Virus record (IMG/VR): IMGVR_UViG_3300017917_002434
Span: 62,001 to 126,000 of that record
Strand: one strand, 5' to 3'
DNA length: 64,000 nt
Part shown: positions 30,464 through 53,861 of the stretch, piece after piece
Numbering within the stretch: position 1 is the first letter of the stretch
How the letters are laid out: every line of letters begins with the position of its first letter
Made by a program: the position numbers and the translations under genes
The notes under the pieces: generated by a model
The model's input: the letters and a program-made list of their open reading frames with translations, nothing else
The model's database searches: none
What the model was told of the DNA's origin: nothing

Positions 30464-31201
30464 ATGAAAGATATTTTACAAGACATCGTAGGTCACACAC
30501 AGAATCTAGGCTTCTTAACAACTGTTAAAGTCACAGGCTCAGAAGAAGGTACAGCAATTTTTTCAATGGCGGATGATCGTTCTGTGATCATGGAAGCTAC
30601 TACACACAATCCATATCCAGATATGATTGGTACATTTGGTATGCCGCAACTACAGAAACTCAAGTATCTGTTAGATGGGCCGGAGTATAAAGAAGATGCT
30701 AAGATCAATATTACCACAGCAGAACGCAATGGCGAAACTATTCCTGTAGGCATCCACTTTGAAAACAAAGACGGCGACTTCAAGAACGATTATCGTTTCA
30801 TGAATCAAGAAATCATCAACGAAAAGATGAAGACAGTCAAGTTTCGTGGTGTTAAGTGGGACGTAGAATTAGAGCCAAGCGTGGCCGCAGTACAGCGTTT
30901 CAACTTTCAAGCAGGTGCTCACAGCGAACATCCGACATTTCTCGCTAAAACAGACAGCGGTAATCTAAAGTTTATCTTTGGTGATGCTTCTACACACGGT
31001 GGTGAGTTTGTATTCGCACAGAATGTAGCAGGTAAACTTGATCGCGGTTGGACTTGGCCAGTCAATCCAATCCTAAGTATCTTGAAAATCGCAGATGTTA
31101 ACAATACAAAAATGGCTCTAAGTAATGAAGGTGCCATCCAGATTACTCTAGACAGCGGTTTAGCTACTTACAAATACATTATTCCAGCACAACAGCAATG
31201 A
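30464..31201 (+). CDS. Probable sliding clamp (gp45/PCNA-like)
   Basis: 245 aa, directly after the polymerase; PCNA-like C-terminal strand YKYIIPA; clamp loader present in the window. Confidence 0.55.
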   Translation: MKDILQDIVGHTQNLGFLTTVKVTGSEEGTAIFSMADDRSVIMEATTHNPYPDMIGTFGMPQLQKLKYLLDGPEYKEDAKINITTAERNGETIPVGIHFENKDGDFKNDYRFMNQEIINEKMKTVKFRGVKWDVELEPSVAAVQRFNFQAGAHSEHPTFLAKTDSGNLKFIFGDASTHGGEFVFAQNVAGKLDRGWTWPVNPILSILKIADVNNTKMALSNEGAIQITLDSGLATYKYIIPAQQQ

Positions 31202-31205: not shown

Positions 31206-31448
31206 ATGAAAGAGTGGCGTGACGCAGATCATAAGGTTTCTTATTATTTTGAAAAAGATAATGGTAGGATCATCGGTCAAGTATACAATCTAGCACATAC
31301 AAATATCTATGGTGCTAAAGTTTACAGCGAACGCAACGAAGAATTATATCTAGGTCAATATATCAGCTATGAATTCGCTAAAAAGGCCACTGAACATTTT
31401 TGGAACGTACAAGAGAGAACACTAACACATGAAGAAGCCACCAGTTAA
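31206..31448 (+). CDS. Hypothetical protein
   Basis: 80-aa ORF in operon context. Confidence 0.55.
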   Translation: MKEWRDADHKVSYYFEKDNGRIIGQVYNLAHTNIYGAKVYSERNEELYLGQYISYEFAKKATEHFWNVQERTLTHEEATS

Positions 31449-32955
31449 TTTAACCCCACTACAGAAAGACTACGCAGTATATCTACCTGCGATCAGTTGT
31501 TTCTTTTCAACATACATTAGCAAACAGAGATTTGACGAATTCGTTCCGCAAGATCGTATTCCTAAAGGATTTGATCGAGGCATCGAAGGTATGAACTTCT
31601 TAAATCCAGAACAGGGTTACTTTACCTACAAATATGGCTTATATTCAGCTGGTCACGCACAATTAGATCTAAATAAGACTATAACACAAGATGCTATGAT
31701 ACAAGATCGTGATCGTGCTAATACTTTGATCGTAGGCGATTCCGGCGGATATCAGATTGGTAAAGGTGTTCTTAAATTTGATTGGCAGAATTTCGAAGGA
31801 GCAGCAGCGAACAAGGTTCGCGACAACATCCTTAATTGGTTAGAATTAACTGCCGATTGGTCAATGTTGCTAGACGTCCCTACCTGGGCTTGTGATCATA
31901 TTCATGGTCCAAAAACAGGATTAAAAAGTTTCAATGATTGTTTAGAAAAAACACTTCACAATAACGACTATTTCATTAGAAATAGACTAGGTCAAACTAA
32001 ATTTTTAAATGTTCTTCAAGGTAGTGACTGGGAAACAGCACAGGCTTGGTATGAAGCAGTTAAACACTTGCCCACAGAAGGTTGGGCGATGGGTGGAAAG
32101 AATATGTGCGATATGGAAATCGCACTAAAAAGACTTATCATTCTAAGAGACGAAAAACTTTTAGATGATAGGAATTGGATGCACTTCTTGGGCACCGCTC
32201 AATTAGATTGGTCCTGCTATCTAACTTCTATTCAACGCCAAGTGAGGGAAAACATCAATGAAAACTTTACCATATCTTTTGACTGTGCCAGCCCATTTAT
32301 CGCAACAGCACACGGACTCGTCTATACTAACGCCCAGCACACAAACAAACGCTGGTCAGTCATCATGGACAAAGCACCAGACAACAAAGCCCTTAGCCAG
32401 GCTTTTCATGTCCCGTTCCCCTTTGAATCAGAAATCGGAAGAAGACTCACTCAAGGTGACATCTGCTGGTACAAGCCGGGAATGTTAAACAAAGTAGGCA
32501 AAGAAGGCAAAACATCTTGGGATAGTTTTGGTTACGCCCTAATGATGGCACATAATACCTACTGTCATATTGTTGCTGTACAACGTGCTAATAATTTGAT
32601 GGATATCGAAACTGCTCGATTCGCTCCCGATTGGAGAGAGTGGAAGAAGATCAAAGACTCGGACATGAGTGACGAGTATTCAGATTGGGTACCTAGAAAT
32701 ATACTTTACTTTGATCGTTTTGTAAAAGAATTATTCAAGAGCGAAACACCTATGCAGATGATCGAAGATGCTAAACCTATGCTATCAAATATGATGGGTA
32801 TGAGACTTAAAGGTGGGGTGGCTAAGAACCAATTTAACAGTTTGTTCGACGAAGAACAAAAAACCGGCGATGTAGAAGATTTCATGGATCCCGAAGATCC
32901 TAAGTTGAAAGAATTGGAAGAACTTTATTACGAACAGGAGGCTCAGAATGTATGA
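31429..32955 (+). CDS. TGT-fold DNA 7-deazaguanine transglycosylase (DpdA-like)
   Basis: GDSGGYQ, MLLDVP, NVLQG, GWAMGG, HFLG, SFDCASP TGT motifs; folE and queE nearby. Confidence 0.75.
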   Translation: MKKPPVNLTPLQKDYAVYLPAISCFFSTYISKQRFDEFVPQDRIPKGFDRGIEGMNFLNPEQGYFTYKYGLYSAGHAQLDLNKTITQDAMIQDRDRANTLIVGDSGGYQIGKGVLKFDWQNFEGAAANKVRDNILNWLELTADWSMLLDVPTWACDHIHGPKTGLKSFNDCLEKTLHNNDYFIRNRLGQTKFLNVLQGSDWETAQAWYEAVKHLPTEGWAMGGKNMCDMEIALKRLIILRDEKLLDDRNWMHFLGTAQLDWSCYLTSIQRQVRENINENFTISFDCASPFIATAHGLVYTNAQHTNKRWSVIMDKAPDNKALSQAFHVPFPFESEIGRRLTQGDICWYKPGMLNKVGKEGKTSWDSFGYALMMAHNTYCHIVAVQRANNLMDIETARFAPDWREWKKIKDSDMSDEYSDWVPRNILYFDRFVKELFKSETPMQMIEDAKPMLSNMMGMRLKGGVAKNQFNSLFDEEQKTGDVEDFMDPEDPKLKELEELYYEQEAQNV

Positions 32956-33160
32956 ACGCAGAATTAAACATTTGGAAGAAGCACACAGAGCACTGGATAA
33001 ACAGATCGAAACTTTGGAAAGAACTGGTAATTTTACAGACCAAAGATTAACTGATTTGAAGAAACATAAGTTGACATTAAAGGATGAAATTGCTATACTA
33101 AAGCGTAAGCAATGGGAACACGACCACGAAACTATCCATTATGACGACGACGAAAGATAA
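32948..33160 (+). CDS. DUF465/YdcH-like coiled-coil protein
   Basis: L.E.H..LD.QI..LE...LKK.KL.LKDEI. Confidence 0.7.
   Translation: MYERRIKHLEEAHRALDKQIETLERTGNFTDQRLTDLKKHKLTLKDEIAILKRKQWEHDHETIHYDDDER
33071..33099 (+). promoter_or_regulatory. Sigma70 promoter TTGACA-N17-TATACT
   Basis: Near-consensus, internal to the upstream gene. Confidence 0.6.
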
Positions 33161-33374
33161 GAAATCTAAACCTCATCAATTTGCTCTTAATCGAAGCCAA
33201 ATTGAAAAACTTGCCAAGATGGCCGCTCACTTTAAAGAAGTCGAGTGGTTCACTCTCGAAGAAAACAATAGCAGCGGAATCGGTCCTACCGTTGTTGTTA
33301 AGTTCAACCTATTCAACGATATCGATAAGGACATCGATACTACCGTTGATATCACTGATGTGAGTACCTGGTGA
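33141..33374 (+). CDS. Hypothetical protein
   Basis: SSGIG motif; operon context. Confidence 0.55.
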   Translation: MTTTKDKKSKPHQFALNRSQIEKLAKMAAHFKEVEWFTLEENNSSGIGPTVVVKFNLFNDIDKDIDTTVDITDVSTW

Positions 33375-33835
33375 ATCAAGATCTTGATAAAAAACTCTGC
33401 GAAAAATATCCAAAAATTTTTAAAGACAGGCACGGTGATCCTAAACAAACTTTAATGTGTTTTGGTTTTGAATGCGGAGACGGATGGTATAGTATTCTCG
33501 ATGCTCTGTGTTCTAATATCCAACATCACATCGATTGGAATAATCAGAATCATGCCAAAGGTTTTAAACAATATAAAGAAGTACCGCAAGTAGTAGCTGT
33601 ACAGATCAAAGAAAAATTTGGAGGTCTTCGTTTTTATTACGACGGTGGCGATGATCACATTAGCGGTATGGTACGGATGGCTGAGTCATGGGCCGATCGT
33701 ACCTGCGAAGAATGCGGAGGACCAGGATATGCAAGACGAGGTGGTTGGATCAAGACTCTTTGCGATCACCACGAAGAAATTAGACAAGAACATTATCGCC
33801 AACGTGAAATGAAACTATCAGGACTTGAAGAATGA
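33371..33835 (+). CDS. Conserved phage protein with C-terminal Zn-ribbon-like motif
   Basis: ECGDGW, QIKEKFGGLRFY, CEECG...TLC. Confidence 0.65.
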   Translation: MNQDLDKKLCEKYPKIFKDRHGDPKQTLMCFGFECGDGWYSILDALCSNIQHHIDWNNQNHAKGFKQYKEVPQVVAVQIKEKFGGLRFYYDGGDDHISGMVRMAESWADRTCEECGGPGYARRGGWIKTLCDHHEEIRQEHYRQREMKLSGLEE

Positions 33836-34290
33836 GAACCTGCGGAGAATGTACAGAATGCTGTACAGGAACATTACAGGGCGAAGTCCGAGGTTATAAA
33901 TTTGATAAAAATTCGCCCTGTTTCTTTTTAAAAGAAAATAAATGTAGCATTTATGAATCCCGTCCAGATCATCCTTGTAAAAATTATAGCTGTATGTGGT
34001 TAAACGATATTAGTATTCCTGATTTCATGAGACCAGATATTTCGAAGGTAGTTTTAACTAAACGGTCTGTTGATAATTTTGATTACATAGAAGCAGAAGA
34101 AGCTGCTCGAAAAATTATGTCTGCTGAAACCCTAGCTAACGTTATCAATTTCGCTGTCCAAACTAAACAGAATTTAGTATACAGAGTTTCGGGCAGACTA
34201 AGATGGTTTGGAGATCCAGAATTTATAAACTTTATGGATAATCAAAAAATAGTTACTAAAATTATTGAGGTAAAACCTTATGAAGCGTGA
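33832..34290 (+). CDS. YkgJ-like Cys-cluster (Zn or Fe-S) protein
   Basis: CGECTECC...CFFL...CSIYESRP..C..YSC. Confidence 0.75.
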   Translation: MRTCGECTECCTGTLQGEVRGYKFDKNSPCFFLKENKCSIYESRPDHPCKNYSCMWLNDISIPDFMRPDISKVVLTKRSVDNFDYIEAEEAARKIMSAETLANVINFAVQTKQNLVYRVSGRLRWFGDPEFINFMDNQKIVTKIIEVKPYEA

Positions 34291-34813
34291 TTACAGACAA
34301 GGTGAAGCAGAAAACATTACGTTTTTTGTAGGAGAAGAAATTGAAAAAACACCAGCATTTGGGCTTCGTACACTTTTTGTTGTCGGTGTTCACGATCCCT
34401 ATATTATTCTTGAGCTTGCTCGCAATAATAATTGTCGTCATATCTATTTCGGTGCTAACCAGAGTTTTAGAACTAACGGCGTCAATGACGCAGAAACTTG
34501 GCGGCCGTGGGAAGATATGATCTATGTCTGTCTCGATGCTGAAGATGGATTCTGGTGTACTTTAGATTTTGATGTACGCGAAACGGAAGGATTGCTAGAG
34601 AGCGGTCTTACCGAAAAGCGTAGATTTATTCCGCAGATTAGTGTAAAATTACCATATATTAATCAACTAGGCTATAACGCTACACTGAAGATTGATGATA
34701 AGAATTTCGCAGCAACTAATCCTGGGGTTTGGTGCCATAACCTACAGGATCTAATGGGTAGAGATAAGTTTACCAATTGGGATCAATATGGCAAGGATGA
34801 GATAATCAAATGA
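34280..34813 (+). CDS. Hypothetical protein in the deazaguanine region
   Basis: 177 aa; TLFVVG, HIYFGANQSF, NPGVWCH. Confidence 0.65.
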   Translation: MKRDYRQGEAENITFFVGEEIEKTPAFGLRTLFVVGVHDPYIILELARNNNCRHIYFGANQSFRTNGVNDAETWRPWEDMIYVCLDAEDGFWCTLDFDVRETEGLLESGLTEKRRFIPQISVKLPYINQLGYNATLKIDDKNFAATNPGVWCHNLQDLMGRDKFTNWDQYGKDEIIK

Positions 34814-35166
34814 GTGGTTACGGACAGGCGATAGGGTATGCTAATACGTCAAAAGGTATAGGTATCAAACCTGCTCGCAAGATAAGGAAACAAAAAGTGA
34901 AACTTACATTTAGACAGCGTATTCGTAATTGGTTGAACAGTGACGACTACGATCAAGATGTTCCTCAAGTAGTGGAAGCAGATCGACTTTCTAGTGAAGG
35001 CATGCGTCTACAAATTTACAAAGCTAATGGCGGTTATGTAGTTGAGACTCGTAGCTATGACAGTCATAAAGATCGTCATCACCATACAATGCATGTAATT
35101 ACTGAAGAAAGCGATCTTGGTGATTCTTTGGGTAAAATCGTAATGATGGAGGCACTGAAAAGATGA
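34810..35166 (+). CDS. Hypothetical protein
   Basis: Coupled ORF; ANGGYVVE motif. Confidence 0.6.
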   Translation: MSGYGQAIGYANTSKGIGIKPARKIRKQKVKLTFRQRIRNWLNSDDYDQDVPQVVEADRLSSEGMRLQIYKANGGYVVETRSYDSHKDRHHHTMHVITEESDLGDSLGKIVMMEALKR

Positions 35167-35366
35167 AAGAGTTTACAGTAAAACAAAGTTCAGCATTTAG
35201 ACTGCGTGTTAAAAGTTGGAAATGCCTTAATCCTTCTGATCTAAATAGTATTGAATTTATTAACGAATCTCTCGACAACAAGGGAGAAGTTAGTCAGAGT
35301 TCTGTATATAATTTCTTCATGACTGACGACGAAGTTAAAACACTCTGCGAAGGAATGTTAAAGTGA
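35163..35366 (+). CDS. Hypothetical protein
   Basis: Coupled ORF. Confidence 0.55.
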   Translation: MKEFTVKQSSAFRLRVKSWKCLNPSDLNSIEFINESLDNKGEVSQSSVYNFFMTDDEVKTLCEGMLK

Positions 35367-35758
35367 TTGTTAAACAAGATATAAGACCCAACAAAATGAT
35401 TTGGGTTACATTCCGTAAAGAAGGAATCCATAAGTATCCAGCAGCCGCAACAGATCCCAATCTAGCAACAGGAGATGAATATGATGTATCGTTTTTGGCT
35501 AATCCCCATCGCCATATTTTTCATTTTAGGGTATGGCTTAGTGTCACCCATAATGACAGAGATGTGGAATTTATACAATTTAAGCGATGGCTCGAAAAAC
35601 TGTATTCTAGCAACGAAGGTGTATTGTCGCTAGACTATAAAAGTTGTGAGATGATGAGCGACGATTTATATGCTCAGATTCACGCAAAGTATCCAGACCG
35701 TGAGGTTTGGATTGAGGTCTCCGAAGACGGAGAAAATGGTTCATTCATCAAATATTAA
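35363..35758 (+). CDS. T-fold QueD-paralog (DpdL-like) protein
   Basis: EGIH..., LANPHRHIF (LxxxHRHxF), RDVEF, SCE, V.EDGENG; lacks the canonical QueD C..HGH motif. Confidence 0.7.
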   Translation: MIVKQDIRPNKMIWVTFRKEGIHKYPAAATDPNLATGDEYDVSFLANPHRHIFHFRVWLSVTHNDRDVEFIQFKRWLEKLYSSNEGVLSLDYKSCEMMSDDLYAQIHAKYPDREVWIEVSEDGENGSFIKY

Positions 35759-35767
35759 AAAGGAAAC

Positions 35768-35971
35768 ATGATGAAACAGCAAGTTGAGAAAATCTTTGAC
35801 GATCTCGACCGTTACTTGGATTTTTGCCGTTTTGAGCTTAGGGACTTTAATCCCGCTCATCTGTACGATAAAGATAATGAAAATTATCGTGCGTTTCTAA
35901 ACAGTCAGCGTCCTCAAAGACGCTGGGATAACAACCGTGGCTATAAGCCATATAATAAACGACATGGGTAA
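35768..35971 (+). CDS. Hypothetical protein
   Basis: AGGA RBS; 67 aa. Confidence 0.55.
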   Translation: MMKQQVEKIFDDLDRYLDFCRFELRDFNPAHLYDKDNENYRAFLNSQRPQRRWDNNRGYKPYNKRHG

Positions 35972-37058
35972 AATATTTCTTGTCGATCTTGAAGCAGTAG
36001 AAACAAGGTACACAGGCGAGTGGAAAACCCACTTGCCTGCCTTGTTAAGAAAGAGAGGTCACGATGTTCAAGTTATTAGTGGTCCTAAAGATATTCCTAG
36101 TGCCACTACTCCTGGTGCCTTTCTTAACTTTGGCGGCACTAATATCTATAAGTCTCGCCAAGTTGAAGAATTTAGTAGGTTATTTACATCCGGAGCAGTT
36201 AAGTCTGGGGATCATTTTATTTTTACTGATGCTTGGCATCCTGGTATCATAAACTTAAAATACATGAGTGAACTACTTAATATCAAAGTAGTTATACATG
36301 CTCTCTGGCATGCCGGATCATATGATCCCCAAGATTTTCTAGGTAGACTGATAGGCAATGCTCCATGGGTTAGACACGCTGAAAAGAGTTTCTTTCATGC
36401 CATAAATCATAACTATTTTGCTACTGACTTCCATATTAGAATGTTCGACAATAATCTTCTAAACGACGGTCTGATGGAAAATCCTTGGCGTTATGAAGAT
36501 ATGAAAGAATATCTAGAGAATAAAAAGATTATTCGATCAGGCTGGCCTATGGAGTATATGCCCGACACTCTATTAATGTATAAGAATATGCCTAAGCGTA
36601 ATCTTATCCTTTTCCCTCATCGTATAGCACCAGAAAAGCAACTTCCGATATTTGAAGATTTAAAAGAAAGATTGCCTCAATACGAATTTAAAGTATGCCA
36701 GGAATATCCGTTAACTAAGAATGAATATCACAATATGTTAGGTGAAGCTAAATTAGTTTTTAGTGCTAACCTACAAGAAACACTAGGCATCAGTTGGTAC
36801 GAAGGTGCTCTAGTAGACGCTATACCTATGGTTCCAAATAGGTTAAGCTATTCAGAAATGGCTTTAGATGATTTTAAATACCCTTCTGAGTGGACAGAAT
36901 CTTTCGAATCATATCACACACATAGAGAAAAGGTAGTACATCAAATTATCCAGTATATGGAAAATTATGAAAAATTCTTACCAAGCCTAAATAAACAGGT
37001 AGATGTATTAACTAAAAACTTCTTTAGTTGCGATAATCTATTAGAGATGTTAAAATAA
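35964..37058 (+). CDS. GT-B fold glycosyltransferase
   Basis: FPHRIAPEKQ and LQETLGISWYEG (E-x7-E) GT4-like motifs; start moved to MGKIF. Confidence 0.75.
   Translation: MGKIFLVDLEAVETRYTGEWKTHLPALLRKRGHDVQVISGPKDIPSATTPGAFLNFGGTNIYKSRQVEEFSRLFTSGAVKSGDHFIFTDAWHPGIINLKYMSELLNIKVVIHALWHAGSYDPQDFLGRLIGNAPWVRHAEKSFFHAINHNYFATDFHIRMFDNNLLNDGLMENPWRYEDMKEYLENKKIIRSGWPMEYMPDTLLMYKNMPKRNLILFPHRIAPEKQLPIFEDLKERLPQYEFKVCQEYPLTKNEYHNMLGEAKLVFSANLQETLGISWYEGALVDAIPMVPNRLSYSEMALDDFKYPSEWTESFESYHTHREKVVHQIIQYMENYEKFLPSLNKQVDVLTKNFFSCDNLLEMLK
37028..37056 (+). promoter_or_regulatory. Possible sigma70 promoter TTGCGA-N17-TAAAAT
   Basis: Upstream of folE; correct spacing. Confidence 0.45.
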
Positions 37059-37093
37059 TATGTCATCCACGACTATAACTCGGAGAAATTTAA

Positions 37094-37918
37094 TTGACAA
37101 CAAAATTTACACCAGATCCTGTCTTAAATGAAAAGATAGATAGAGAATTCAAACCAGACGAATACAAAGACGAATATGTGCCTCTAGACAAACCAGTATA
37201 TGTAAAGGCACAGGATAGAAAACAAGATGGAGCATATCTAGCCGATATCATCCGTGTTAAGATGAAACACGATGGTAAGAGATATTGGGCAGGTGATAAT
37301 ATTTCCGAATACGTCACTGAAGAAATGAAGCACAAGCTCATCGATGAAGCTACAGAAGCCTTTGAACTTGTATTAGATAGACTCTTGATTGATCGTGAGA
37401 ACGATCCTAACAGCCATGGAACAGCCCGCAGACTTGCAAAAATGTACTTCAACGAAATCATGTCAGGTCGATATGAACCGAGTCCCTCAGCCACAGCGTT
37501 CCCTAATGATACAGAGGACCGTTACGAAGGTATGCTGGTTGTTCGCAGTGAGCTTCGCAGTATGTGTAGCCATCATCACCAGCCCGTTAATGGTGTTGCC
37601 TATATTGGTATTATTGCGGCTTCTAAGCTCATTGGCCTCTCTAAGTACACACGCATCGCACAGTGGTGTGCCCGACGTGGTACTCTCCAGGAGGAACTTG
37701 CTAATGATATTGCTCGCGAGATCTCCAAAGCCACGGGAGCCAAAGACGTAGGCGTTTACATTCAAGCTACACATGGTTGCTGTGAAAACAGAGGCATCAT
37801 GGCACATAGTTCATTGACGCAGACTACAGTATTAAAGGGTGCGTTCAAAGACGATCAAAGTACAAAGAAAGAGTTCTTTGATAATATTAAACTACAACAA
37901 GATTTCGCTCCGAGATAA
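37094..37918 (+). CDS. folE: GTP cyclohydrolase I
   Basis: SMCSHH, IGLSKY.R, LQEEL, HGCCENRG. Confidence 0.93.
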   Translation: MTTKFTPDPVLNEKIDREFKPDEYKDEYVPLDKPVYVKAQDRKQDGAYLADIIRVKMKHDGKRYWAGDNISEYVTEEMKHKLIDEATEAFELVLDRLLIDRENDPNSHGTARRLAKMYFNEIMSGRYEPSPSATAFPNDTEDRYEGMLVVRSELRSMCSHHHQPVNGVAYIGIIAASKLIGLSKYTRIAQWCARRGTLQEELANDIAREISKATGAKDVGVYIQATHGCCENRGIMAHSSLTQTTVLKGAFKDDQSTKKEFFDNIKLQQDFAPR

Positions 37919-37919
37919 T

Positions 37920-38150
37920 ATGAATACAGCAGAACAAGCCACAGCATTTATAAACAGAGTAAAGAATCTCAAAACGTTTGAAGTAAAGCGTATGTTAGAT
38001 GAGCCTTTAGAATTTAGAGGTGGCCGTATACCGTTCGATATCAAGGCTAATCAAGAATGTGCGTGGTTTCAGGTTCTCGCTGTGAGCCAGAAAGAAGCAG
38101 AAGAAATGGTCGATGCTTGGATGCGAGGCGATGATGATTACGAGGCTTAA
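37920..38150 (+). CDS. Hypothetical protein
   Basis: Start moved to MNTAEQ, right after the folE stop. Confidence 0.55.
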   Translation: MNTAEQATAFINRVKNLKTFEVKRMLDEPLEFRGGRIPFDIKANQECAWFQVLAVSQKEAEEMVDAWMRGDDDYEA

Positions 38151-38589
38151 AGACGAATTGATGGTCCAGCAGCAACTACCCGACGGCCTAGATACTGTTA
38201 ACGGTGCTTGGCAACATATGGTAGCTGTAATTATGTTGAACCAAACTGGTCGTGGTCCTGTAAAAAATGTTTTTCCTATTTTCATAGATAGATGGAGGAC
38301 TCCAGGGGCATTTTATAGAGCCTTTAAGCATTTTGGTCAAGACGAAGATATACGAGATATTATCTGGCCCCTAGGACTAGTTAGTGTAAGAGCAAAACGT
38401 CTCAAGCGTATGACGGAAGATTTTTTAACCTGGGATCATAACGATGCTACTAAACTCTACGGCATTGGCAAATACGGTTCTGATTCATACGAAATTTTCT
38501 TTAAAAAGAATTATACAGTTCAACCAACAGATAAAGAGCTACAACGTTATCTAAAAGAAGAGGTATTTAATGTTTCTGAGATTACTTGA
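38131..38589 (+). CDS. HhH-GPD DNA glycosylase, MBD4-like
   Basis: WQHMVAVIMLNQT, PLGL...RAKRL, LYGIGKYGSDSYEIF, P.DK.L..Y parallel the MBD4 glycosylase domain. Confidence 0.75.
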   Translation: MMITRLKDELMVQQQLPDGLDTVNGAWQHMVAVIMLNQTGRGPVKNVFPIFIDRWRTPGAFYRAFKHFGQDEDIRDIIWPLGLVSVRAKRLKRMTEDFLTWDHNDATKLYGIGKYGSDSYEIFFKKNYTVQPTDKELQRYLKEEVFNVSEIT

Positions 38590-39034
38590 ACGACTAGGTC
38601 GTAAACGTATTATAATGGATCGTGTTGACAACGAACCGTACCTAGAAAGATATTATCTATTTCTAAAAGATCGTAAAACTTTTCCCTTTAATATCTTTCT
38701 ACATAAATTTTTAAAAGGGGATCCAGATGACGTCCATGATCATCCGTGGTCTTACGCTACTCTAATTTTGAAAGGTGGTTACTATGAATGGACTCCGACG
38801 TTTGATGAGCATAACAACCAAGTTGGAGAAACTAGGCATTGGCGTGGCCCTGGCCATTTTCGTATTTGCAGTCCTAATAGCTATCATCGCATCGAACTTA
38901 AAGATGGGGTAACTGCTTGGACTCTGTTTATGCCGGGGCCTCAGAAACGAGAATGGGGATTTCTCGTAGATAACAAATGGATTCAAAACGAACAATACAT
39001 AGCACAACGCAAGGAGTCAAATGTTAAAACGTAA
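38570..39034 (+). CDS. Cupin-fold metal-binding protein
   Basis: HDHPW....IL.GGY.E ... YHRI ... WTLF. Confidence 0.7.
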   Translation: MFLRLLERLGRKRIIMDRVDNEPYLERYYLFLKDRKTFPFNIFLHKFLKGDPDDVHDHPWSYATLILKGGYYEWTPTFDEHNNQVGETRHWRGPGHFRICSPNSYHRIELKDGVTAWTLFMPGPQKREWGFLVDNKWIQNEQYIAQRKESNVKT

Positions 39035-39614
39035 AGTAAGTTGGCACGAATTTCAGAATTTAGTTTCTAAAATCTGCAGAGACATCAGTCTAAGTAACTG
39101 GCGTCCTGATTATGTAGTAGGCATTACTAGAGGTGGATTATTACCAGCGGTGATGATAAGTCAGTATTTCAAAGTACCTTGTGAGACTCTAAAAGTTAGC
39201 TTACGAGGTAATGCCGGAGAAGTAGATACAGAAAGTAACCTCTGGATGGCGTCTGACGCTTTAGGTTACAATAGAACTAAAGAAGTCGCTGATGAAAATG
39301 ACATTGAAGCAATTTTTGAAGCTGCGACTGAGTTATTAGAAAACGGCGAAACATATAAAAATATATTGATAGTAGACGATATTAACGATACTGGTGCTAC
39401 AATAAACTGGATATTAAAAGACTGGCCGTCTAGTTGCTTTCCATCCGATCCTATGTGGCAAGATGTTTGGAATAATAATGTTAGATTTGCTACAGTATTC
39501 GATAATCTAGCCAGTCAAGCAGAAGTCTCTATGGATTATGTAGGTGAGGAAATAAACAAAGCCGAAAATCCTGTTTGGATAGAATTTCCTTTCGAAGAAT
39601 GGTGGACTAAATGA
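39021..39614 (+). CDS. Type I purine phosphoribosyltransferase (Gpt-like)
   Basis: VVGITRGGL.PA, PRPP loop ILIVDDINDTGAT, WIEFP.E. Confidence 0.85.
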   Translation: MLKRKVSWHEFQNLVSKICRDISLSNWRPDYVVGITRGGLLPAVMISQYFKVPCETLKVSLRGNAGEVDTESNLWMASDALGYNRTKEVADENDIEAIFEAATELLENGETYKNILIVDDINDTGATINWILKDWPSSCFPSDPMWQDVWNNNVRFATVFDNLASQAEVSMDYVGEEINKAENPVWIEFPFEEWWTK

Positions 39615-39838
39615 TAGATGCCAAAGTAAAGATACGCTGCACTGACAACGGTAAAGATGTAGAAGCACATATTTTAAATTATAAGCCTAAAGCATTTTTA
39701 GAAGTTGCTTTCCAGACTGTAAAATTACGTATGGTATACAAAGAGAATACTAAAGTATTTTTTGGTAATCTTATGGGTAGAGAATTTGTTATTAAAGAAG
39801 ATTCGTTACCTCAAGAACGCAAGGAGTTTCAGCGATGA
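39611..39838 (+). CDS. Hypothetical protein
   Basis: Coupled ORF. Confidence 0.55.
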   Translation: MIDAKVKIRCTDNGKDVEAHILNYKPKAFLEVAFQTVKLRMVYKENTKVFFGNLMGREFVIKEDSLPQERKEFQR

Positions 39839-40233
39839 AAGGCGATAATGTTAAAGTCATAAAAGATCAACCTCCATTTATAGAAGATGGAGATGCTCCA
39901 TGGGATAATCTTTTAGAAGAAGATTATCATGTAAAGGTATTTGCTGACAAATATCCAGTTACAGAAGGACACGTTTTATTTGTGCCTAAATATAACACCG
40001 TAGCTGTGCTCATGGATGCGTTTGAAGATGCTATTACTGATGGTATAAGAATGGTCCAAAATGGTAAATGCGATGGCTTTAATGTCGGTTTCAATTACGG
40101 CAGTGCGGCAGGGCAGACAGTTCCGTGGCCGCATGTACATTTAATTCCCCGGAGGTCGGGAGATATGGAGGACCCTACAGGTGGCGTAAGACACGTCATT
40201 CCTGAAAAGGGCAATTATAGGAAAACAAAATGA
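39835..40233 (+). CDS. HIT-family nucleotide hydrolase
   Basis: YPVTEGHVLFVPK, AGQTV..PHVHLIPR. Confidence 0.88.
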   Translation: MKGDNVKVIKDQPPFIEDGDAPWDNLLEEDYHVKVFADKYPVTEGHVLFVPKYNTVAVLMDAFEDAITDGIRMVQNGKCDGFNVGFNYGSAAGQTVPWPHVHLIPRRSGDMEDPTGGVRHVIPEKGNYRKTK

Positions 40234-40433
40234 GAGACAAGATGATCAGTGTTCTAAAACAACACTTTGAAGCACATATTTTGAAGCATAGAATGAATGT
40301 AGATATCATGTTAAGTAACCCTATGGCTATTCATGATCATACAGATTTAATGGAAGCTATTGAAAAGGAAGTTGATAAAATTTCTGAGTACATGGATAAA
40401 CTAGAAGTAATGGAAAAATATTTCCGTGACTGA
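40230..40433 (+). CDS. Hypothetical protein
   Basis: Coupled ORF. Confidence 0.55.
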   Translation: MRDKMISVLKQHFEAHILKHRMNVDIMLSNPMAIHDHTDLMEAIEKEVDKISEYMDKLEVMEKYFRD

Positions 40434-40620
40434 GATTAAAGTTCGCTGGAAAAATCAATCGAACACTTGGTGGAATGAAACCTGTGCTCGAATACTTGAA
40501 CGGTTTGGTCTTCCAGGAGATCGATATACTACTGAAGTCGGTGCCGACGAAATGATATTTTTCTTTAAAGACGATCGAGATGCTTTTTTTTGTAGACTAA
40601 TGATCAGCGAGGAACTATGA
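40426..40620 (+). CDS. Hypothetical protein
   Basis: GTG start; FGLPG.RY and F.D.RDA..F motifs. Confidence 0.55.
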   Translation: MTEIKVRWKNQSNTWWNETCARILERFGLPGDRYTTEVGADEMIFFFKDDRDAFFCRLMISEEL

Positions 40621-40826
40621 GTATGCGTGATAGAATTATCGTAATAATAGCGTTGGCATTTTGTGTCTATATATTATTCAACTCAGATCTTAGTAATAAT
40701 AGAACAAAAATTTACGATTGTACTATTTCCGAGATCAGTCCCGATTTTCCTATAGAAGTAAGAGAGGAATGTCGCAGATTAAGAAAAGAATATCACGAAA
40801 GACATAATAACAAGTATACAACATGA
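40617..40826 (+). CDS. Small membrane-anchored protein
   Basis: N-terminal TM; YDC..SEISPDFP..V..ECR. Confidence 0.55.
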   Translation: MSMRDRIIVIIALAFCVYILFNSDLSNNRTKIYDCTISEISPDFPIEVREECRRLRKEYHERHNNKYTT

Positions 40827-41641
40827 GTAGAGCATTATTTTTAGGTGATAGTCATACTTGCGGATACGTAACTATCCCAGGAAAGACCGGATTTGGTAGT
40901 TATAGCATGTGGAATGACAATAACTACGCCGAATCATATGCTAAAGAGTATTCTAAACCTACAGCGGTGTATGCGTTGCCTGGAGTATGTAATAGAATCT
41001 ACCCAGACTGGTTGAGATCTATGTTAGACAAACATCCTGATATAGATGAAGTATTTGTTCTTTTAGCTAGTTTCAACAGATTTGTACTAGCATTTAACGA
41101 AAAGTTATCACAGGACGTTTTGCCAGCAGACTATTTTACACTACAACATGAGAAAAAAGATCCTCTCATCGACTTGTATTACGATCAAATTTTTAAAGAC
41201 GACCGGTTCCAACTTCTTAATAAGCCGACCTATGAAGATTTTGGAAAAATAGCAGATATAAGTTTTGATTATAAAAATGGACTTATTAAGCCGGATCTGA
41301 GGAAAGACACATTTATGGATGTAAAATTATTCTTTGATCTAAATACTCATCTGGAACAAAGAGATTTTTTCAAAGATATTTTAGTTATGGACAGAATGTG
41401 CGAAGATCACGGATGTAAAATTTATCTTTTTAACATGACTGACCGTGTACAGTTTCCGGATCGTTTTGATTTTTACACAAAATTAAAATCTACAGTAATT
41501 TCACCAATTACTATAGAATCGTTCTTTAGACAAAGATTCATCGATCATAGAAAATACTATCTCGATGATAATGAACATTATAATAAATCGTTTCACGATT
41601 TGATTGCTACCAAATTTATTCCATGGCTAAAAACAATTTAA
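40823..41641 (+). CDS. SGNH/GDSL-like hydrolase/acyltransferase
   Basis: FLGDSHT.G block I; C-terminal DNEH. Confidence 0.6.
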   Translation: MSRALFLGDSHTCGYVTIPGKTGFGSYSMWNDNNYAESYAKEYSKPTAVYALPGVCNRIYPDWLRSMLDKHPDIDEVFVLLASFNRFVLAFNEKLSQDVLPADYFTLQHEKKDPLIDLYYDQIFKDDRFQLLNKPTYEDFGKIADISFDYKNGLIKPDLRKDTFMDVKLFFDLNTHLEQRDFFKDILVMDRMCEDHGCKIYLFNMTDRVQFPDRFDFYTKLKSTVISPITIESFFRQRFIDHRKYYLDDNEHYNKSFHDLIATKFIPWLKTI

Positions 41642-42225
41642 AAATCTTATTAGCAGGAGATAGTTTTTCTGCGAAATGGCCCGACGGTCCCTCAGGATGG
41701 CCAGAATTATTACGGAAAGAGTTTAACATAACGAATGTATCACAGGCAGGTGTAGGCGAATATAAAATCTTAAAGCAGATCGAGAGTCAAGATATAAAAA
41801 AATTCGATCTAGTAATTGTTAACCACACTAGCCCTTTTAGAGTACATACATCTAAACCTATCCATAATAGCAAATTACATGCTAACTGTGATCTTATCTT
41901 TACAGATGTTGAATCGAATTTAGATATTAAAAACGAAAGCACAGTGACCGCATATAATTGGTTCAAGTATCATTACGACGAGCTGTATCAAAAAGACATT
42001 TACGATTTACTTAGAAAAGAAATTCATAGATCTATTACTGTTCCTTACCTAGCTATAGATCACACAGATACAAGTTTCAAACATTCTTTCGAGGAACCGC
42101 ATATTGATTTTACTAATCATTGGAGATTCCATCGAGGTTTAGTAAATCATTATACAGAAGAAGGTAATAAAATCGTCGCTCAAAAAATAAAGGAGAAAAT
42201 CAATGAGATGGGTCTTAACTGTTGA
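41623..42225 (+). CDS. SGNH/GDSL-like protein
   Basis: AGDSFS, N.SQAGVG, NHY..EGN. Confidence 0.6.
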   Translation: MAKNNLKILLAGDSFSAKWPDGPSGWPELLRKEFNITNVSQAGVGEYKILKQIESQDIKKFDLVIVNHTSPFRVHTSKPIHNSKLHANCDLIFTDVESNLDIKNESTVTAYNWFKYHYDELYQKDIYDLLRKEIHRSITVPYLAIDHTDTSFKHSFEEPHIDFTNHWRFHRGLVNHYTEEGNKIVAQKIKEKINEMGLNC

Positions 42226-42370
42226 TGACGATGGTGTTTTAACTTTTCCGCCAGAGCTGTTAGAAGCTAACGGATGGAAAGAAGGCGATGTGCTAGTTTG
42301 GAAAAATAATGAGGACGGTTCTTGGACATTGTCTAAAAAACTTGACAACGACAAAGAAGAGAGTGTATAA
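42203..42370 (+). CDS. AbrB/MazE/SpoVT-like small protein, 55 aa (not in ORF track)
   Basis: AGGAG RBS; MRWVLTVDDDGVLTFPPELLEANGWKEGDVLVW. Confidence 0.7.
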   Translation: MRWVLTVDDDGVLTFPPELLEANGWKEGDVLVWKNNEDGSWTLSKKLDNDKEESV

Positions 42371-42371
42371 T
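42342..42371 (+). promoter_or_regulatory. Sigma70 promoter TTGACA-N18-TATAAT
   Basis: Perfect hexamers; predicted start site near ATG 42378. Confidence 0.65.
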
Positions 42372-42377
42372 ATAACT

Positions 42378-42656
42378 ATGAACACCAAATCTCACGAAAT
42401 CATGAGCATTCTTCAAGAAGAATGTTCCGAAGTAATCCAAGCAGTTTCGAAAATTAATAGATTCGGAATCGATAATTACAAACCAGGAAAACCAAAAACT
42501 AACAGAGAACATCTAGAAGAAGAATTGGGAGACCTATTAGCAATGGTCGATCTTTTAGAAAAAGATGGTATCATCTCTAAAGATAAAATGGAAGTGGCTA
42601 AGAAAGCCAAATTCGAAAAACTAAAAAAATGGTCAAGTATCTATGAGCAAAATTAA
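42378..42656 (+). CDS. MazG-like NTP pyrophosphatase
   Basis: LQEECSEVIQAVSK...LEEELGDL; start moved to MNTKS. Confidence 0.8.
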   Translation: MNTKSHEIMSILQEECSEVIQAVSKINRFGIDNYKPGKPKTNREHLEEELGDLLAMVDLLEKDGIISKDKMEVAKKAKFEKLKKWSSIYEQN

Positions 42657-43494
42657 AATAGCAGAACTGTTTTACAGCATACAAGGTGAAGGACGTTATA
42701 TGGGCGTGCCTTCTGTTTTCTTACGTACATTTGGTTGTAACTTTAAGTGTGCTGGGTTTGGTATGCCTAAAGGGCAACTTAGTAAAGAAATCGAAGATAT
42801 CGCAGCCAGAGTACATTATTTTAAAACATATGAAGAACTCCCATTGGTTTCTACTGGTTGTGATAGTTACGCTAGCTGGGATCCTCGCTTTAAGGATCTT
42901 AGTCCAATGCTTACTAGCGACGCCATCGCACAAAGAATCTGCGAGATTCTACCGTTCAATGAATGGAGAGACGAGCATCTCGTCATCACAGGAGGAGAAC
43001 CGTTGCTTGGGTGGCAACGTGCTTACCCCGAACTGTTAGATCATCCTAAGATGAAGGATCTCAGAGAAATTACGTTTGAAACAAATGGTACTCAAAAACT
43101 TACTCCAGAATTTAAAAAATATCTATTAGACTGGGGCATGGAGAATCGAGGATATCATAGATTGACTTTTAGTGTCAGTGCCAAACTTAGTTGTTCTGGT
43201 GAGCCGAGACACGAAGCTATACGTCCCGATGTTGTTTGTGAATATGAAGAAGTCGGTTATACATATCTTAAATTTGTCATCGCCACAGAAGAAGATGCCG
43301 AGGAAGCCATCGAAACCTATGACATTTATCGTGCTGAAGGATTTAGCGGGCCTTGTTATCTAATGCCTGTAGGTGGAGTAGAAAGTGTTTACAATTTGAA
43401 TAACCGTCGAGTAGCAGAATTAGCTATGAAGAGCGGCTTACGTTATAGTGACAGATTACAAGTACCGTTATTTAAGAATGAGTGGGGAACATAA
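42643..43494 (+). CDS. queE: 7-carboxy-7-deazaguanine synthase (radical SAM)
   Basis: ELFYSIQGEG, VFLRTFGCN..C, CDS, VITGGEP, ETNG, RLQV. Confidence 0.88.
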   Translation: MSKIKIAELFYSIQGEGRYMGVPSVFLRTFGCNFKCAGFGMPKGQLSKEIEDIAARVHYFKTYEELPLVSTGCDSYASWDPRFKDLSPMLTSDAIAQRICEILPFNEWRDEHLVITGGEPLLGWQRAYPELLDHPKMKDLREITFETNGTQKLTPEFKKYLLDWGMENRGYHRLTFSVSAKLSCSGEPRHEAIRPDVVCEYEEVGYTYLKFVIATEEDAEEAIETYDIYRAEGFSGPCYLMPVGGVESVYNLNNRRVAELAMKSGLRYSDRLQVPLFKNEWGT

Positions 43495-43922
43495 TGAAAA
43501 AAATTATAGATAAATTTTTCGGTCTCGAAAAATTAAAAGAAGAGAAAGAGGCATTACAGGCCGCAAGAGATAAAGCAGTTGCTGAAACCGTTCGAGCACA
43601 GGAGGAAGCCGAACTTGCCAAAATGACTCCAAAAGATCGTGCTACCAAAAAAGGCGAGCCTTGGGTCAGTGTATTAGATACCAAAGTAAATCCAGATAAT
43701 ATCCGTAACGGATTTTTCGAACTTGACTGGAACGAACAATTTGTGCTAAAATTAAAGCAAGAGGGTTATGGTTTCGATGGCGACCCTGATGAAGAAATCG
43801 TTGATCGCTGGTTTAGGGATATCGTTAGGCAGATGTTGGCCGAAGAAGGAATGGATGTCAATAGACCCGCAGGTTATATTAATGTAACACCTATCTCTAA
43901 AGGAAAGTCAGAAGTTTCATGA
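43494..43922 (+). CDS. Hypothetical protein
   Basis: TAATG-coupled start; FELDWN..F motif. Confidence 0.6.
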   Translation: MKKIIDKFFGLEKLKEEKEALQAARDKAVAETVRAQEEAELAKMTPKDRATKKGEPWVSVLDTKVNPDNIRNGFFELDWNEQFVLKLKQEGYGFDGDPDEEIVDRWFRDIVRQMLAEEGMDVNRPAGYINVTPISKGKSEVS

Positions 43923-53858: not shown

Positions 53859-53861
53859 AGT

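What the first reader, a model, noticed from the sequence alone, without database searches (positions are those of the whole stretch)
31429..43494. Dispersed 7-deazaguanine DNA-modification system without QueC, with a DpdL-type T-fold enzyme
Seen: a DpdA/TGT-like gene two genes after the polymerase-clamp pair, FolE, QueE, and a T-fold protein with LxxxHRHxF rather than the QueD motif. No QueC, QueF, Gat-QueC or canonical QueD occurs in the window. Known: FolE-QueD-QueE make CDG, QueC converts it to preQ0, and DpdA swaps the base into DNA. From recall, a QueD paralog with this His motif (DpdL) was proposed to decarboxylate CDG to 7-deazaguanine. Inference: the genome carries dDG, dCDG or a further derivative, inserted by an unusually long (508 aa) DpdA.
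Basis: partly seen in the sequence, partly recalled or inferred. Interest (0 to 1): 0.8.

Follow-up and report, generated by a model that had tools for sequence, protein, structure and literature searches.

The report
Jumbo-phage 7-deazaguanine DNA modification cassette
A freshwater giant phage carries a conserved gene block that most likely replaces guanine in its own DNA with a 7-deazaguanine base, using an unannotated but very common base-swapping enzyme family and a tightly linked sugar-transferase that published pathway schemes do not include.

Summary
The window is 64 kb of a 269,730-bp freshwater metagenome contig from a jumbo phage. Just after the PolB–clamp pair it encodes:
- a 508-aa protein that folds as a tRNA-guanine-transglycosylase/DpdA TIM barrel and keeps both catalytic Asp residues
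- a DpdL-type T-fold protein with the motif LANPHRHIF
- FolE and QueE

No QueC, QueD or QueF occurs in the window.

Three points change the picture.
1. The genes are not loosely dispersed. They form a block, DpdA–p177–DpdL–GT4–FolE–cupin–PRTase–HIT–QueE. In 80 related viral contigs with enough flank, p177 is present in 51/51, DpdL in 45/45 and the GT in 36/37.
2. The missing QueD is probably a window-edge effect. PA5oct, and a 354-kb relative I walked, carry canonical QueD 55 and 38 kb from the DpdA gene. QueC is absent from all of PA5oct that I fetched.
3. The DpdA is neither DpdA3 nor unusually long. It belongs to a large family (at least 7,974 clusters at 90% identity) with no Pfam or PHROG annotation, remotely nearest to DpdA2.

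A GT4 glycosyltransferase lies within two genes of DpdL in six phage lineages. The final base could therefore be dDG or a sugar-bearing derivative. Chemistry was not tested.

The parts
27735..30401 (+). Family-B DNA polymerase. It marks the upstream boundary of the replication block that holds the cassette.
   Evidence: Pfam DNA_pol_B 1.6e-36. Best tblastn hit is Sinorhizobium phage Phosso at 51%, followed by Atu_ph07 and Rak2-like jumbo phages.
30464..31201 (+). Sliding-clamp-like protein.
   Evidence: phrog_12062 1e-37. The Phosso homologue is annotated as a sliding clamp. It lies next to the polymerase in 78 of 80 related loci.
31429..32955 (+). DpdA-like guanine transglycosylase (TGT-fold TIM barrel, 508 aa). 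Member of a large unannotated family.
   Evidence: AF2 pLDDT 90.6. Foldseek PDB top 27 hits are all TGT/QTRT1/DpdA. In BFVD, nt-1 DpdA2 scores E 9.5e-9. hhalign gives 86% against E. coli Tgt, 88% against nt-1 DpdA2 and 96.6% against the ACP17 424-aa protein. D104/S105/G107/D285 are invariant. DSGG[YF]Q occurs in 80/80 and FDCASP in 77/80 related loci.
34280..34813 (+). p177: conserved partner of unknown fold and function. In relatives it usually sits directly after the DpdA gene.
   Evidence: Present in 51/51 related loci with enough flank. 45% identical to PA5oct EST35_0364, and homologous to the gene directly upstream of the ACP17 dpdA. No Pfam, PHROG or NCBIfam hit. The Atlas search was uninformative.
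35396..35758 (+). DpdL-type T-fold (PTPS/QueD-like) protein with motif LANPHRHIF. Proposed CDG decarboxylase.
   Evidence: phrog_17812. tblastn and alignment to ACP17, PA5oct, Phosso and phiST DpdL. H23, H49, H51, E96 and E121 are shared with QueD, but the catalytic Cys is replaced by Leu. 90 of 100 named Atlas neighbours carry PF01242. Present in 45/45 related loci.
35964..37058 (+). GT-B glycosyltransferase of GT4 type (364 aa) with an EX7E motif. Tightly linked to DpdL.
   Evidence: AF2 pLDDT 82. Foldseek PDB top hits are BshA, a Bacillus anthracis GT4 (BA1558) and glycogen synthase, with MshA lower down (best E 7e-9). E272 and E280 are invariant. It lies within 1-2 genes of DpdL in Phosso, PA5oct, ACP17, Xanthomonas X1/BUDD, BUCT-ZZ01 and a 354-kb ENA contig. 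Present in 36/37 related loci.
37094..37918 (+). GTP cyclohydrolase I (FolE).
   Evidence: Pfam PF01227 1.1e-39. NCBIfam FolE 6.5e-40, below the cut-off.
38113..38589 (+). Small HhH-GPD-like protein. The assignment is weak and the role is unknown.
   Evidence: Pfam HhH-GPD E 0.005, below threshold. Present in 12 related loci at the same position.
38570..39034 (+). Cupin-like protein.
   Evidence: phrog_4786 ('cysteine dioxygenase') 1.7e-38. No Pfam or NCBIfam hit. Present in 33 related loci between FolE and QueE.
39021..39614 (+). Type-I phosphoribosyltransferase, closest to xanthine-guanine PRTase (Gpt).
   Evidence: Pfam PF00156 8e-14. NCBIfam xanthine PRTase NF006613 3.8e-10, below the cut-off. 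Its PA5oct homologue sits between DpdL and QueE. A PF00156 gene also sits between QueE and FolE in an unrelated T4-like cluster.
39835..40233 (+). HIT-family nucleotide hydrolase/transferase.
   Evidence: Pfam HIT 7.7e-10. Present in 23 related loci.
42378..42656 (+). MazG-type NTP pyrophosphohydrolase.
   Evidence: Pfam MazG 2.2e-7. phrog_4856 1e-26. phiST also has a MazG next to DpdL.
42643..43494 (+). QueE-like radical-SAM CDG synthase.
   Evidence: phrog_2076 3.2e-50. PDB top hits 6nhl, 4njg and 5tgs are all QueE. 52% identical to the QueE of a QueD-QueE-PRT-FolE-QueF-QueC cluster.
43919..44905 (+). RNase H / 5'-3' exonuclease. Downstream boundary of the conserved block.
   Evidence: Pfam 5_3_exonuc_N 1e-19. 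It occupies the same position in PA5oct and Phosso.

Best explanation
The cassette most likely makes a 7-deazaguanine base from GTP and swaps it for guanine in the phage's own DNA after replication. This would shield the genome from restriction enzymes that read G.

Steps:
1. FolE turns GTP into dihydroneopterin triphosphate (homology).
2. A QueD-type enzyme makes CPH4. It is not in the window. It is inferred to lie elsewhere in the roughly 270-kb genome or to come from the host.
3. QueE makes 7-carboxy-7-deazaguanine, CDG (homology).
4. With no QueC, the pathway does not go on to preQ0. Instead the DpdL T-fold protein processes CDG. Cui et al. proposed decarboxylation to 7-deazaguanine, which has never been shown.
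5. The 508-aa TGT-fold enzyme, with both catalytic Asp residues intact, exchanges G in DNA for the new base (inferred from fold, genomic context and PA5oct DNA behaviour).
6. The Gpt-like PRTase plausibly recycles the released guanine into GMP/GTP to feed step 1 (inference).
7. The GT4 glycosyltransferase and p177 are conserved parts of the system. Their step is unknown. They may be accessory to insertion, or may decorate the base further.
For: - Gene identities.
- Conserved block in 80 viral contigs, with p177 51/51, DpdL 45/45, GT 36/37 and no QueC, QueD or QueF within 10 kb.
- The same DpdA family sits beside 7-deazaguanine genes in four other settings:
  - PA5oct: DpdA-GT-DpdL-...-PRT-QueE
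  - Phosso
  - Vibrio 2.275.O: DpdA-x-QueF-YhhQ-QueC-Gat-FolE...QueE...QueD
  - a 354-kb ENA contig
- phiST, which has FolE, QueD, QueE and DpdL but no QueC, has all of its G replaced by dDG according to LC-MS (PMC10516641).
- PA5oct has no QueC or QueF in the 283 kb of 286.8 kb that I fetched.
- Relatives carry canonical QueD 38-55 kb from the DpdA gene.
Against: - No chemistry exists for this phage or any member of its clade.
- DpdL activity has never been demonstrated. Expressing ACP17 or phiST dpdL with dpdA in E. coli gave no dDG.
- QueD was not found in the window. The remaining 206 kb of the contig could not be read, because giant genes block the walk.
- The DpdA-like protein is only remotely related to proven DpdAs (hhalign 86-97%, TM 0.4-0.5). 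Its family has no invariant Cys, so the Zn site of TGT/DpdA is not conserved.
- A GT4 enzyme has no role in a plain dDG pathway.
Confidence: 0.6

Rival explanations
1. The final DNA base is not plain dDG. It is a sugar-bearing 7-deazaguanine derivative: the GT4 enzyme transfers a hexose from an NDP-sugar onto the base or its precursor, before or after insertion.
For: - The GT4 gene lies within 1-2 genes of DpdL in six lineages that use two different DpdA subfamilies.
- It is present in 36/37 clade loci.
- It has an intact EX7E motif and a strongly conserved N-terminal (acceptor) domain.
- In the 354-kb relative, a phosphomannomutase and a nucleotidyltransferase/mannose-P-isomerase gene are interleaved with DpdL, DpdA and GT.
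- Co-expressing dpdL and dpdA without the GT failed.
Against: - 7-deazaguanine itself has no obvious acceptor group.
- phiST makes dDG without this GT.
- 12 of 29 DpdL-bearing phage records lack the GT.
- Sugar-nucleotide genes were seen inside the cassette in only one relative.
- I found no report of a glycosylated purine in DNA.
Confidence: 0.22
2. The base is built into DNA before or during replication. The PRTase couples CDG or 7-deazaguanine to PRPP, the nucleotide is converted to a dNTP, MazG clears dGTP, and the polymerase incorporates it. The TGT-like enzyme would be secondary.
For: - A Gpt-like PRTase and a MazG are conserved inside the block.
- A PRTase sits between QueE and FolE in an unrelated T4-like cluster.
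- From my own knowledge, deazapurine antibiotic pathways (toyocamycin, tubercidin) use a PRTase on preQ0/CDG.
Against: - Every genome examined that has the synthesis genes also keeps a DpdA-type enzyme with intact catalytic residues.
- Cui et al. make the same argument for post-replicative insertion.
- ACP17 and Phosso clusters lack the PRTase in the stretches I read.
- No dedicated kinase or reductase was identified in the block.
Confidence: 0.07
3. A queC, and perhaps a queF or Gat domain, lies in the unread 206 kb of the contig. The phage then makes ordinary dPreQ0, dPreQ1 or dG+, and DpdL is a side activity.
For: Only 24% of the contig was seen. The same DpdA family works with QueC/QueF in Vibrio 2.275.O.
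Against: - DpdL and QueC were mutually exclusive in every genome or contig examined.
- No QueC was found in 80 clade loci, or in 58 kb walked in the 354-kb relative.
Confidence: 0.06
4. The TGT-like enzyme modifies tRNA, of host or phage, with a queuosine-type base. It does not act on DNA.
For: The closest solved structures are tRNA-guanine transglycosylases. Jumbo relatives encode tRNAs.
Against: - The gene sits in the replication block, next to the polymerase and clamp here and next to primase/helicase in Phosso.
- PA5oct DNA is restriction-resistant at G-containing sites.
- The window has no tRNA gene.
- Among viral models it is nearer to DpdA2 of nt-1 than to other classes.
Confidence: 0.05

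Closest known systems
dDG system of Cellulophaga phage phiST (FolE, QueD, QueE, DpdL, DpdA3, MazG; Cui et al. 2023, PMC10516641)
   Same: FolE, QueE, a DpdL-type T-fold with LxxxHRHxF, a nearby MazG, no QueC, and a TGT-fold enzyme close to the polymerase genes.
   Different: - The transglycosylase here is 508 aa and is not DpdA3: hhalign to phiST CGPG_00065 gives only 56%, and there is no BLAST match.
- DpdL is only 33-36% identical.
- phiST has no GT4, p177, PRTase, cupin or HIT partner.
- QueD is adjacent in phiST but absent from this window.
Pseudomonas jumbo phage PA5oct (Wroclawvirus) locus EST35_0316-0322
   Same: Same DpdA family (42% identical), GT4 (41%), DpdL (55%), PRTase and QueE, in the same position after the polymerase and clamp and before RNase H. 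Its DNA resists G-reading restriction enzymes.
   Different: - In PA5oct, FolE and two QueD paralogues lie 55 kb away, and p177 lies 27 kb away.
- All of these PA5oct genes except QueE are annotated 'hypothetical'.
- The 2025 preprint flagged only QueE and a PTPS-like gene, and no transglycosylase.
DpdA2 of Vibrio phage nt-1 / KVP40-like phages, and the ACP17 424-aa DpdA
   Same: TGT-fold DNA transglycosylases of comparable length (424-464 aa) with DSGG and (Y/F)D(S/C) catalytic motifs. ACP17 combines its enzyme with p177, GT4, DpdL and QueE.
   Different: Related only at profile or fold level: hhalign 88-97%, Foldseek E 9.5e-9, TM about 0.45. nt-1 uses QueC/ArcS chemistry (preQ0/G+), not DpdL.
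Vibrio phage 2.275.O cluster NVP2275O_468-483
   Same: Same DpdA family (30% identical; top BFVD structural hit, TM 0.72) after the polymerase and clamp, with FolE (50%), QueE (31%) and QueD.
   Different: It carries QueC, QueF, a Gat-like amidohydrolase and a YhhQ-type transporter, and has no DpdL or GT4. That is a preQ0/preQ1-type branch rather than the DpdL branch.

Membership tests
TGT/DpdA superfamily (base-exchanging transglycosylases) | (beta/alpha)8 TIM-barrel fold of tRNA-guanine transglycosylase | tested here: met
   AF2 pLDDT 90.6. The Foldseek PDB top 27 hits are all TGT, QTRT1 or DpdA; other folds start at E >= 1e-2.
TGT/DpdA superfamily (base-exchanging transglycosylases) | Two catalytic aspartates, in the DSGGFQ and xFDC motifs, plus the base-pocket motifs in the same order | tested here: met
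   D104 and D285 are invariant in 48 representatives. hhalign aligns them with the E. coli Tgt motifs. 80/80 and 77/80 clade loci keep them.
TGT/DpdA superfamily (base-exchanging transglycosylases) | Structural Zn site (CxCxxC...H) | tested here: not met
   No Cys is invariant or nearly invariant in the 48-sequence alignment. The C-terminal part is helical in the model.
TGT/DpdA superfamily (base-exchanging transglycosylases) | Exchange of G in DNA for a 7-deazaguanine | not testable with these tools
   Only context speaks to this: its position in the replication block, co-location with 7-deazaguanine genes in five lineages, and PA5oct restriction resistance.
DpdA3 (phiST / Campylobacter phage type) | Detectable sequence relationship to phiST CGPG_00065 | tested here: not met
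   tblastn of the 508-aa protein finds no Cellulophaga or Campylobacter phage. hhalign probability is 56% over 86 columns.
DpdA2 (nt-1 type) | Sequence or profile relationship to nt-1 DpdA2 | tested here: inconclusive
   hhalign gives 88% to nt-1 and 96.6% to the DpdA2-like ACP17 protein. Foldseek BFVD gives E 9.5e-9, but TM is only 0.44-0.47. There is no BLAST-level similarity.
DpdL (proposed CDG decarboxylase) | LxxxHRHxF in place of the QueD motif CxxxHGH, on a PTPS/QueD-like T-fold | tested here: met
   LANPHRHIF. Aligns with the ACP17, PA5oct, Phosso and phiST DpdL proteins and with QueD, sharing the His/Glu ligands. Atlas neighbours carry PF01242. hhalign to E. coli QueD from a 5-sequence profile is weak, at 17%.
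DpdL (proposed CDG decarboxylase) | [quoted passage not shown] | tested here: inconclusive
   DpdA, FolE and QueE are present and QueC is absent in the window. QueD was not found in the window, but it is present at a distance in PA5oct and the 354-kb relative. 76% of the contig was not read.
DpdL (proposed CDG decarboxylase) | Decarboxylates CDG to 7-deazaguanine | not testable with these tools
   This has not been shown for any member. Heterologous expression failed (PMC10516641).
QueE (7-carboxy-7-deazaguanine synthase) | QueE-specific N-terminal substrate motif and radical-SAM core | tested here: met
   phrog_2076 3e-50. Five NCBIfam QueE models match at E 1e-10 to 5e-13, all below their cut-offs. 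PDB top hits are E. coli, Burkholderia and Bacillus QueE.
QueE (7-carboxy-7-deazaguanine synthase) | Three-Cys cluster motif (CX3CX2C or CX14CX2C) | tested here: inconclusive
   The sequence reads C32-x3-C36 with no Cys at +3. The next Cys is C73. The whole-window scan finds CX3CX2C only in the other radical-SAM gene.
GT4 retaining glycosyltransferases (GT-B) | Two-Rossmann GT-B fold with an EX7E motif in the C-terminal domain | tested here: met
   AF2 pLDDT 82. Foldseek hits BshA, MshA and glycogen synthase, best E 7e-9, TM 0.6-0.66. E272-x7-E280, R220 and K225 are invariant. No Pfam hit for the protein itself.
GT4 retaining glycosyltransferases (GT-B) | Donor and acceptor identity | not testable with these tools
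   Context only: linkage to DpdL and DpdA, and PMM and NT/PMI genes in one relative.

The most novel reading that the evidence does not exclude
In these jumbo and T4-like phages, the DpdL branch does not stop at 7-deazaguanine. The conserved GT4 enzyme, possibly together with p177, yields a glycosylated 7-deazaguanine in DNA. This would be the first sugar-decorated purine hypermodification. It would be inserted by a DpdA subfamily that has not been recognised before and that is widespread in freshwater viromes.
Probability: 0.2. Interest if true: 0.9.

Novelty: new variant of a known kind. Interest (0 to 1): 0.64.

Why it matters
Phage 7-deazaguanine DNA modifications defeat restriction enzymes and are themselves targets of newly found defence nucleases. 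The published scheme names DpdA1-4 and leaves DpdL unproven.

This work adds three things:
- A very abundant TGT-fold family, with at least 7,974 clusters at 90% identity and 950 at 50%, all annotated 'hypothetical'. It is the likely insertase in PA5oct-like, Phosso-like, Vibrio 2.275.O-like and freshwater jumbo phages.
- DpdL almost always travels with a GT4 glycosyltransferase and a 177-aa protein that the earlier failed reconstitution left out.
- A cultured model. PA5oct carries the same genes, so the nature of its 'modified G' and the DpdL reaction can be tested directly.

Tried and rejected
- **Sequence searches of the 508-aa protein** against Pfam, PHROGs, NCBIfam and PDB, as a single sequence and as a 48-sequence profile, gave nothing useful. 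Pfam TGT appeared only in 2 of 48 members at E 0.0045. Fold and profile-profile methods were needed.
- **Walking the window's own contig** with the look-up of encoding contigs stopped at a 2,841-aa gene upstream and a 4,890-aa gene downstream. The rest of the genome could not be checked for queC or queD.
- **Looking for a QueD on the same contigs as the DpdA clade.** Two IMG/VR scans found no shared contig names. The A11-type list was cut at 80 of at least 583 matches. The hit P0447 from that search did lead to the 354-kb relative.
- **The Pfam family list for ORFs 1-27.5 kb** was cut at 25 of 49 families. For that stretch the absence of QueC/D/F rests on tblastn and motif scans.
- **Other dead ends.** The Atlas search for p177 gave only low-confidence primase-like neighbours. 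The DpdL profile against PDB sequences found nothing. The megablast search of the region against phage genomes found no match.
- **Rejected: DpdL as a stand-in for QueD.** It lacks the catalytic Cys, and it co-exists with canonical QueD in ACP17, phiST and PA5oct.
- **Rejected: a FolE + PTPS-like + GT pterin-glycoside pathway.** A pterin glucosyltransferase (5zer) is only rank 44 among the GT hits. DpdL and the GT lie between the DpdA gene and QueE in ACP17, PA5oct and this clade.

Full report
**What the window is.** All genes from 47 to 48,422 but two lie on the + strand, followed by a − strand structural block. The family-B polymerase at 27735-30401 is closest to jumbo phages: Sinorhizobium phage Phosso at 51%, then Agrobacterium Atu_ph07, Vibrio 2.275.O and Rak2-like phages. 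An exact-protein look-up places the window on JGI metagenome contig 3300017917 Ga0192394_122066, which is 269,730 bp long. The window covers contig positions 62,001-126,000. Near-identical sequence occurs in freshwater, pond, river and aquaculture metagenomes from a dozen studies. Only 24% of the genome was therefore visible.

- *The 508-aa ORF (31429-32955).* It has no Pfam, PHROG, NCBIfam or PDB sequence match, but it contains DSGGYQ and FDCASP.
  - It belongs to a very large family: at least 7,974 clusters at 90% identity and 950 representatives at 50%. Every source name shown for its members is 'hypothetical protein'.
  - In a 48-sequence alignment, S73, D104, S105, G107, P151, W207, H252 and D285 are invariant.
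  - AlphaFold2 on that alignment gave pLDDT 90.6 and pTM 0.90.
  - Foldseek against the PDB returned 27 hits at E <= 3.5e-4. All are bacterial TGT, human or mouse QTRT1, or the DNA preQ0 insertase DpdA (7ui4). Unrelated TIM barrels begin at E 1e-2.
  - hhalign of the family profile against E. coli Tgt gave 86% probability (E 5e-6). It aligned DSGGFQ, the FDE/LDV pocket, the (I/L)QG and GG motifs, the LG motif and FDC.
- *The T-fold ORF (35396-35758).* It carries LANPHRHIF and matches phrog_17812. By tblastn it is 67% identical to its homologue in Phosso, 55% in PA5oct, 54% in ACP17 and 33% in phiST; in the MAFFT alignment these figures are 66, 54, 57 and 36%. The ACP17 and phiST proteins are the ones Cui et al. 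named DpdL.
- *FolE (37094-37918)* is unambiguous.
- *QueE (42643-43494)* matches the phage QueE PHROG at 3e-50. Its best PDB hits are the three solved QueE enzymes.

**What is missing.** tblastn with E. coli QueC, QueD and QueF, and with QueD from ACP17, phiST and both PA5oct types, finds nothing significant in the window (best E 0.046). A six-frame motif scan finds no CxxxHG[HY] or SGGxDS. However, PA5oct, which has the same DpdA family, keeps FolE and two QueD-type genes 55 kb from it. It has no QueC or QueF in the 283 of 286.8 kb that I fetched.

I could not walk the window's own contig, because giant genes sit on both sides. Instead I walked a 353,636-bp ENA contig that is syntenic with the window (polymerase 55%, clamp loader 57%, PhoH 61% identical). 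It carries a canonical QueD next to ClpP. About 38 kb further on, it carries Pol-clamp-DpdL-...-PMM-DpdA(521 aa)-NT/PMI-GT-FolE-...-QueE-like. No QueC appeared in the 58 kb walked. A QueD outside the window is therefore the likeliest explanation for the gap.

A scan of IMG/VR found at least 593 relatives of the DpdA-like protein. In the 80 loci kept (60-91% identity) the order is Pol-clamp-DpdA-p177-DpdL-GT-FolE-(HhH)-cupin-PRTase-HIT-(MazG)-QueE-RNaseH. Where enough flank exists, p177 is present in 51/51 loci, DpdL in 45/45 and the GT in 36/37. QueC, QueD and QueF appear in 0/80.
- *The GT (35964-37058).* Its model has pLDDT 82 and matches GT4 enzymes such as BshA, MshA and glycogen synthase (best E 7e-9). 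It has an invariant EX7E motif. Among cultured phages it occurs in Phosso, the PA5oct group, ACP17, Xanthomonas X1/BUDD and Synechococcus BUCT-ZZ01, always within one or two genes of DpdL. In all of these but Phosso it is also next to a DpdA gene.
- *p177 (34280-34813).* It is conserved in PA5oct, and in ACP17 it sits directly upstream of dpdA.
- *The PRTase (39021-39614).* It is Gpt-like and has a homologue between DpdL and QueE in PA5oct. A PRTase also sits between QueE and FolE in a T4-like contig that carries QueF and QueC.

**Which DpdA is it?** The ACP17 424-aa protein is DpdA2-like: its tblastn hits include nt-1, VH7D and KVP40. The 508-aa family profile matches it at 96.6% and matches nt-1 DpdA2 at 88%, but matches phiST DpdA3 at only 56%. 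In BFVD the best structural match is a 596-aa protein, probably that of Vibrio 2.275.O (TM 0.72). Next come several unnamed viral proteins and the 'tRNA guanine transglycosylase' of Achromobacter phage Motura, then nt-1 DpdA2, and then actinophage enzymes. I therefore read it as a separate DpdA subfamily, nearest to DpdA2. I found no paper that names it. The PA5oct preprint flagged only QueE and a PTPS-like gene. In Vibrio 2.275.O the same family sits with QueF, a YhhQ-type transporter, QueC, a Gat-like gene, FolE, QueE and QueD, with no DpdL or GT. The insertase family therefore serves more than one branch of the pathway.

**Mechanism.**
- *Shown by homology:* FolE, QueE, the TGT fold with catalytic residues, the DpdL family, the GT4 fold and the PRTase.
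- *Taken from the literature:* phiST, with FolE, QueD, QueE and DpdL but no QueC, has all G replaced by dDG. PA5oct DNA resists enzymes that read G.
- *Inferred:* CDG is made, DpdL converts it (decarboxylation is proposed but unproven), and the DpdA-like enzyme inserts the product into DNA after replication. The PRTase returns the released guanine to the GTP pool.
- *Unexplained:* what the GT4 and p177 do. Their near-universal linkage, the sugar-nucleotide genes inside the cassette of one relative, and the failed reconstitution without them keep open a sugar-bearing product.

**Verdict.** The finding is real, and its interpretation is supported with corrections. It is a new variant of a known kind: an unrecognised DpdA subfamily, plus a GT4/p177-linked form of the DpdL branch. 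A cultured phage, PA5oct, is available for direct tests.

Noticed in passing
L012 (contig 53,059-62,000, just upstream of the window) and L014 (just downstream): The window is flanked by two giant genes. One is 2,841 aa with a faint T4 gp9/10 N-terminal hit. The other is 4,890 aa with faint CBM_5_12 and FG-GAP hits. Both are presumably structural or fibre proteins.
   Followed up: no
window 48412-49800 (-): A second radical-SAM protein of 462 aa. It has the only canonical CX3CX2C motif in the window, sits at the start of the minus-strand block, and matches phrog_14086. Its function is unknown, and it is not part of the conserved cassette.
   Followed up: partly
window 40823-41641 and 41623-42225 (+): Two adjacent ORFs with N-terminal GDS motifs (LFLGDSHT, LLAGDSFS), suggesting SGNH/GDSL hydrolases. 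They are inserted between HIT and MazG. They have no Pfam or PHROG hit.
   Followed up: no
window 6770-19262 (+): A chaperone and proteostasis set typical of this jumbo lineage: Cpn10, DnaJ, a ClpB/ClpA-like AAA+ protein, peptide deformylase and PhoH. There is also a clamp loader, a dCMP deaminase, a PolIII-alpha fragment and a D-Ala-D-Ala carboxypeptidase. The region is syntenic with PA5oct at 183-196 kb.
   Followed up: partly
L011 (PA5oct 168-172 kb) and L001: PA5oct encodes three T-fold paralogues: EST35_0254 (Campylobacter-phage-type QueD), EST35_0258 (ACP17/phiST-type QueD, annotated hypothetical) and EST35_0318 (DpdL-like, with HFH instead of HRH).
   Followed up: partly
L265 10001-13162 (ENA 354-kb relative): A phosphomannomutase (PF03332) and a nucleotidyltransferase/mannose-P-isomerase (PF01467 + PF01050) flank the DpdA gene, within a stretch that also holds DpdL and the GT4. 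Similar genes also lie within a few kb of QueD in several unrelated viral contigs (L103-L107, L127, L136-L141).
   Followed up: partly
L261 10001-15326 (JGI 174-kb T4-like contig): A compact QueD-QueE-PRTase-FolE-423aa-QueF-QueC cluster. Its QueE is 52% and its FolE 60% identical to those of the window. The synthesis genes therefore seem to move between phage lineages independently of the DpdL or QueC branch.
   Followed up: partly
window 33832-34290 (+): A Cys-rich ORF that begins with a CxxCxxCC-type motif (phrog_9155, unknown function). It lies among the small ORFs that separate DpdA from p177 here, whereas the two are adjacent in many relatives.
   Followed up: no
window 47757-48422 (+) and 10776-11288 (+): ThyX (flavin-dependent thymidylate synthase, Pfam 1.9e-45) and a dCMP deaminase. 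This is ordinary pyrimidine supply, with no sign of a hydroxymethylase that would give the GT4 a pyrimidine acceptor.
   Followed up: no
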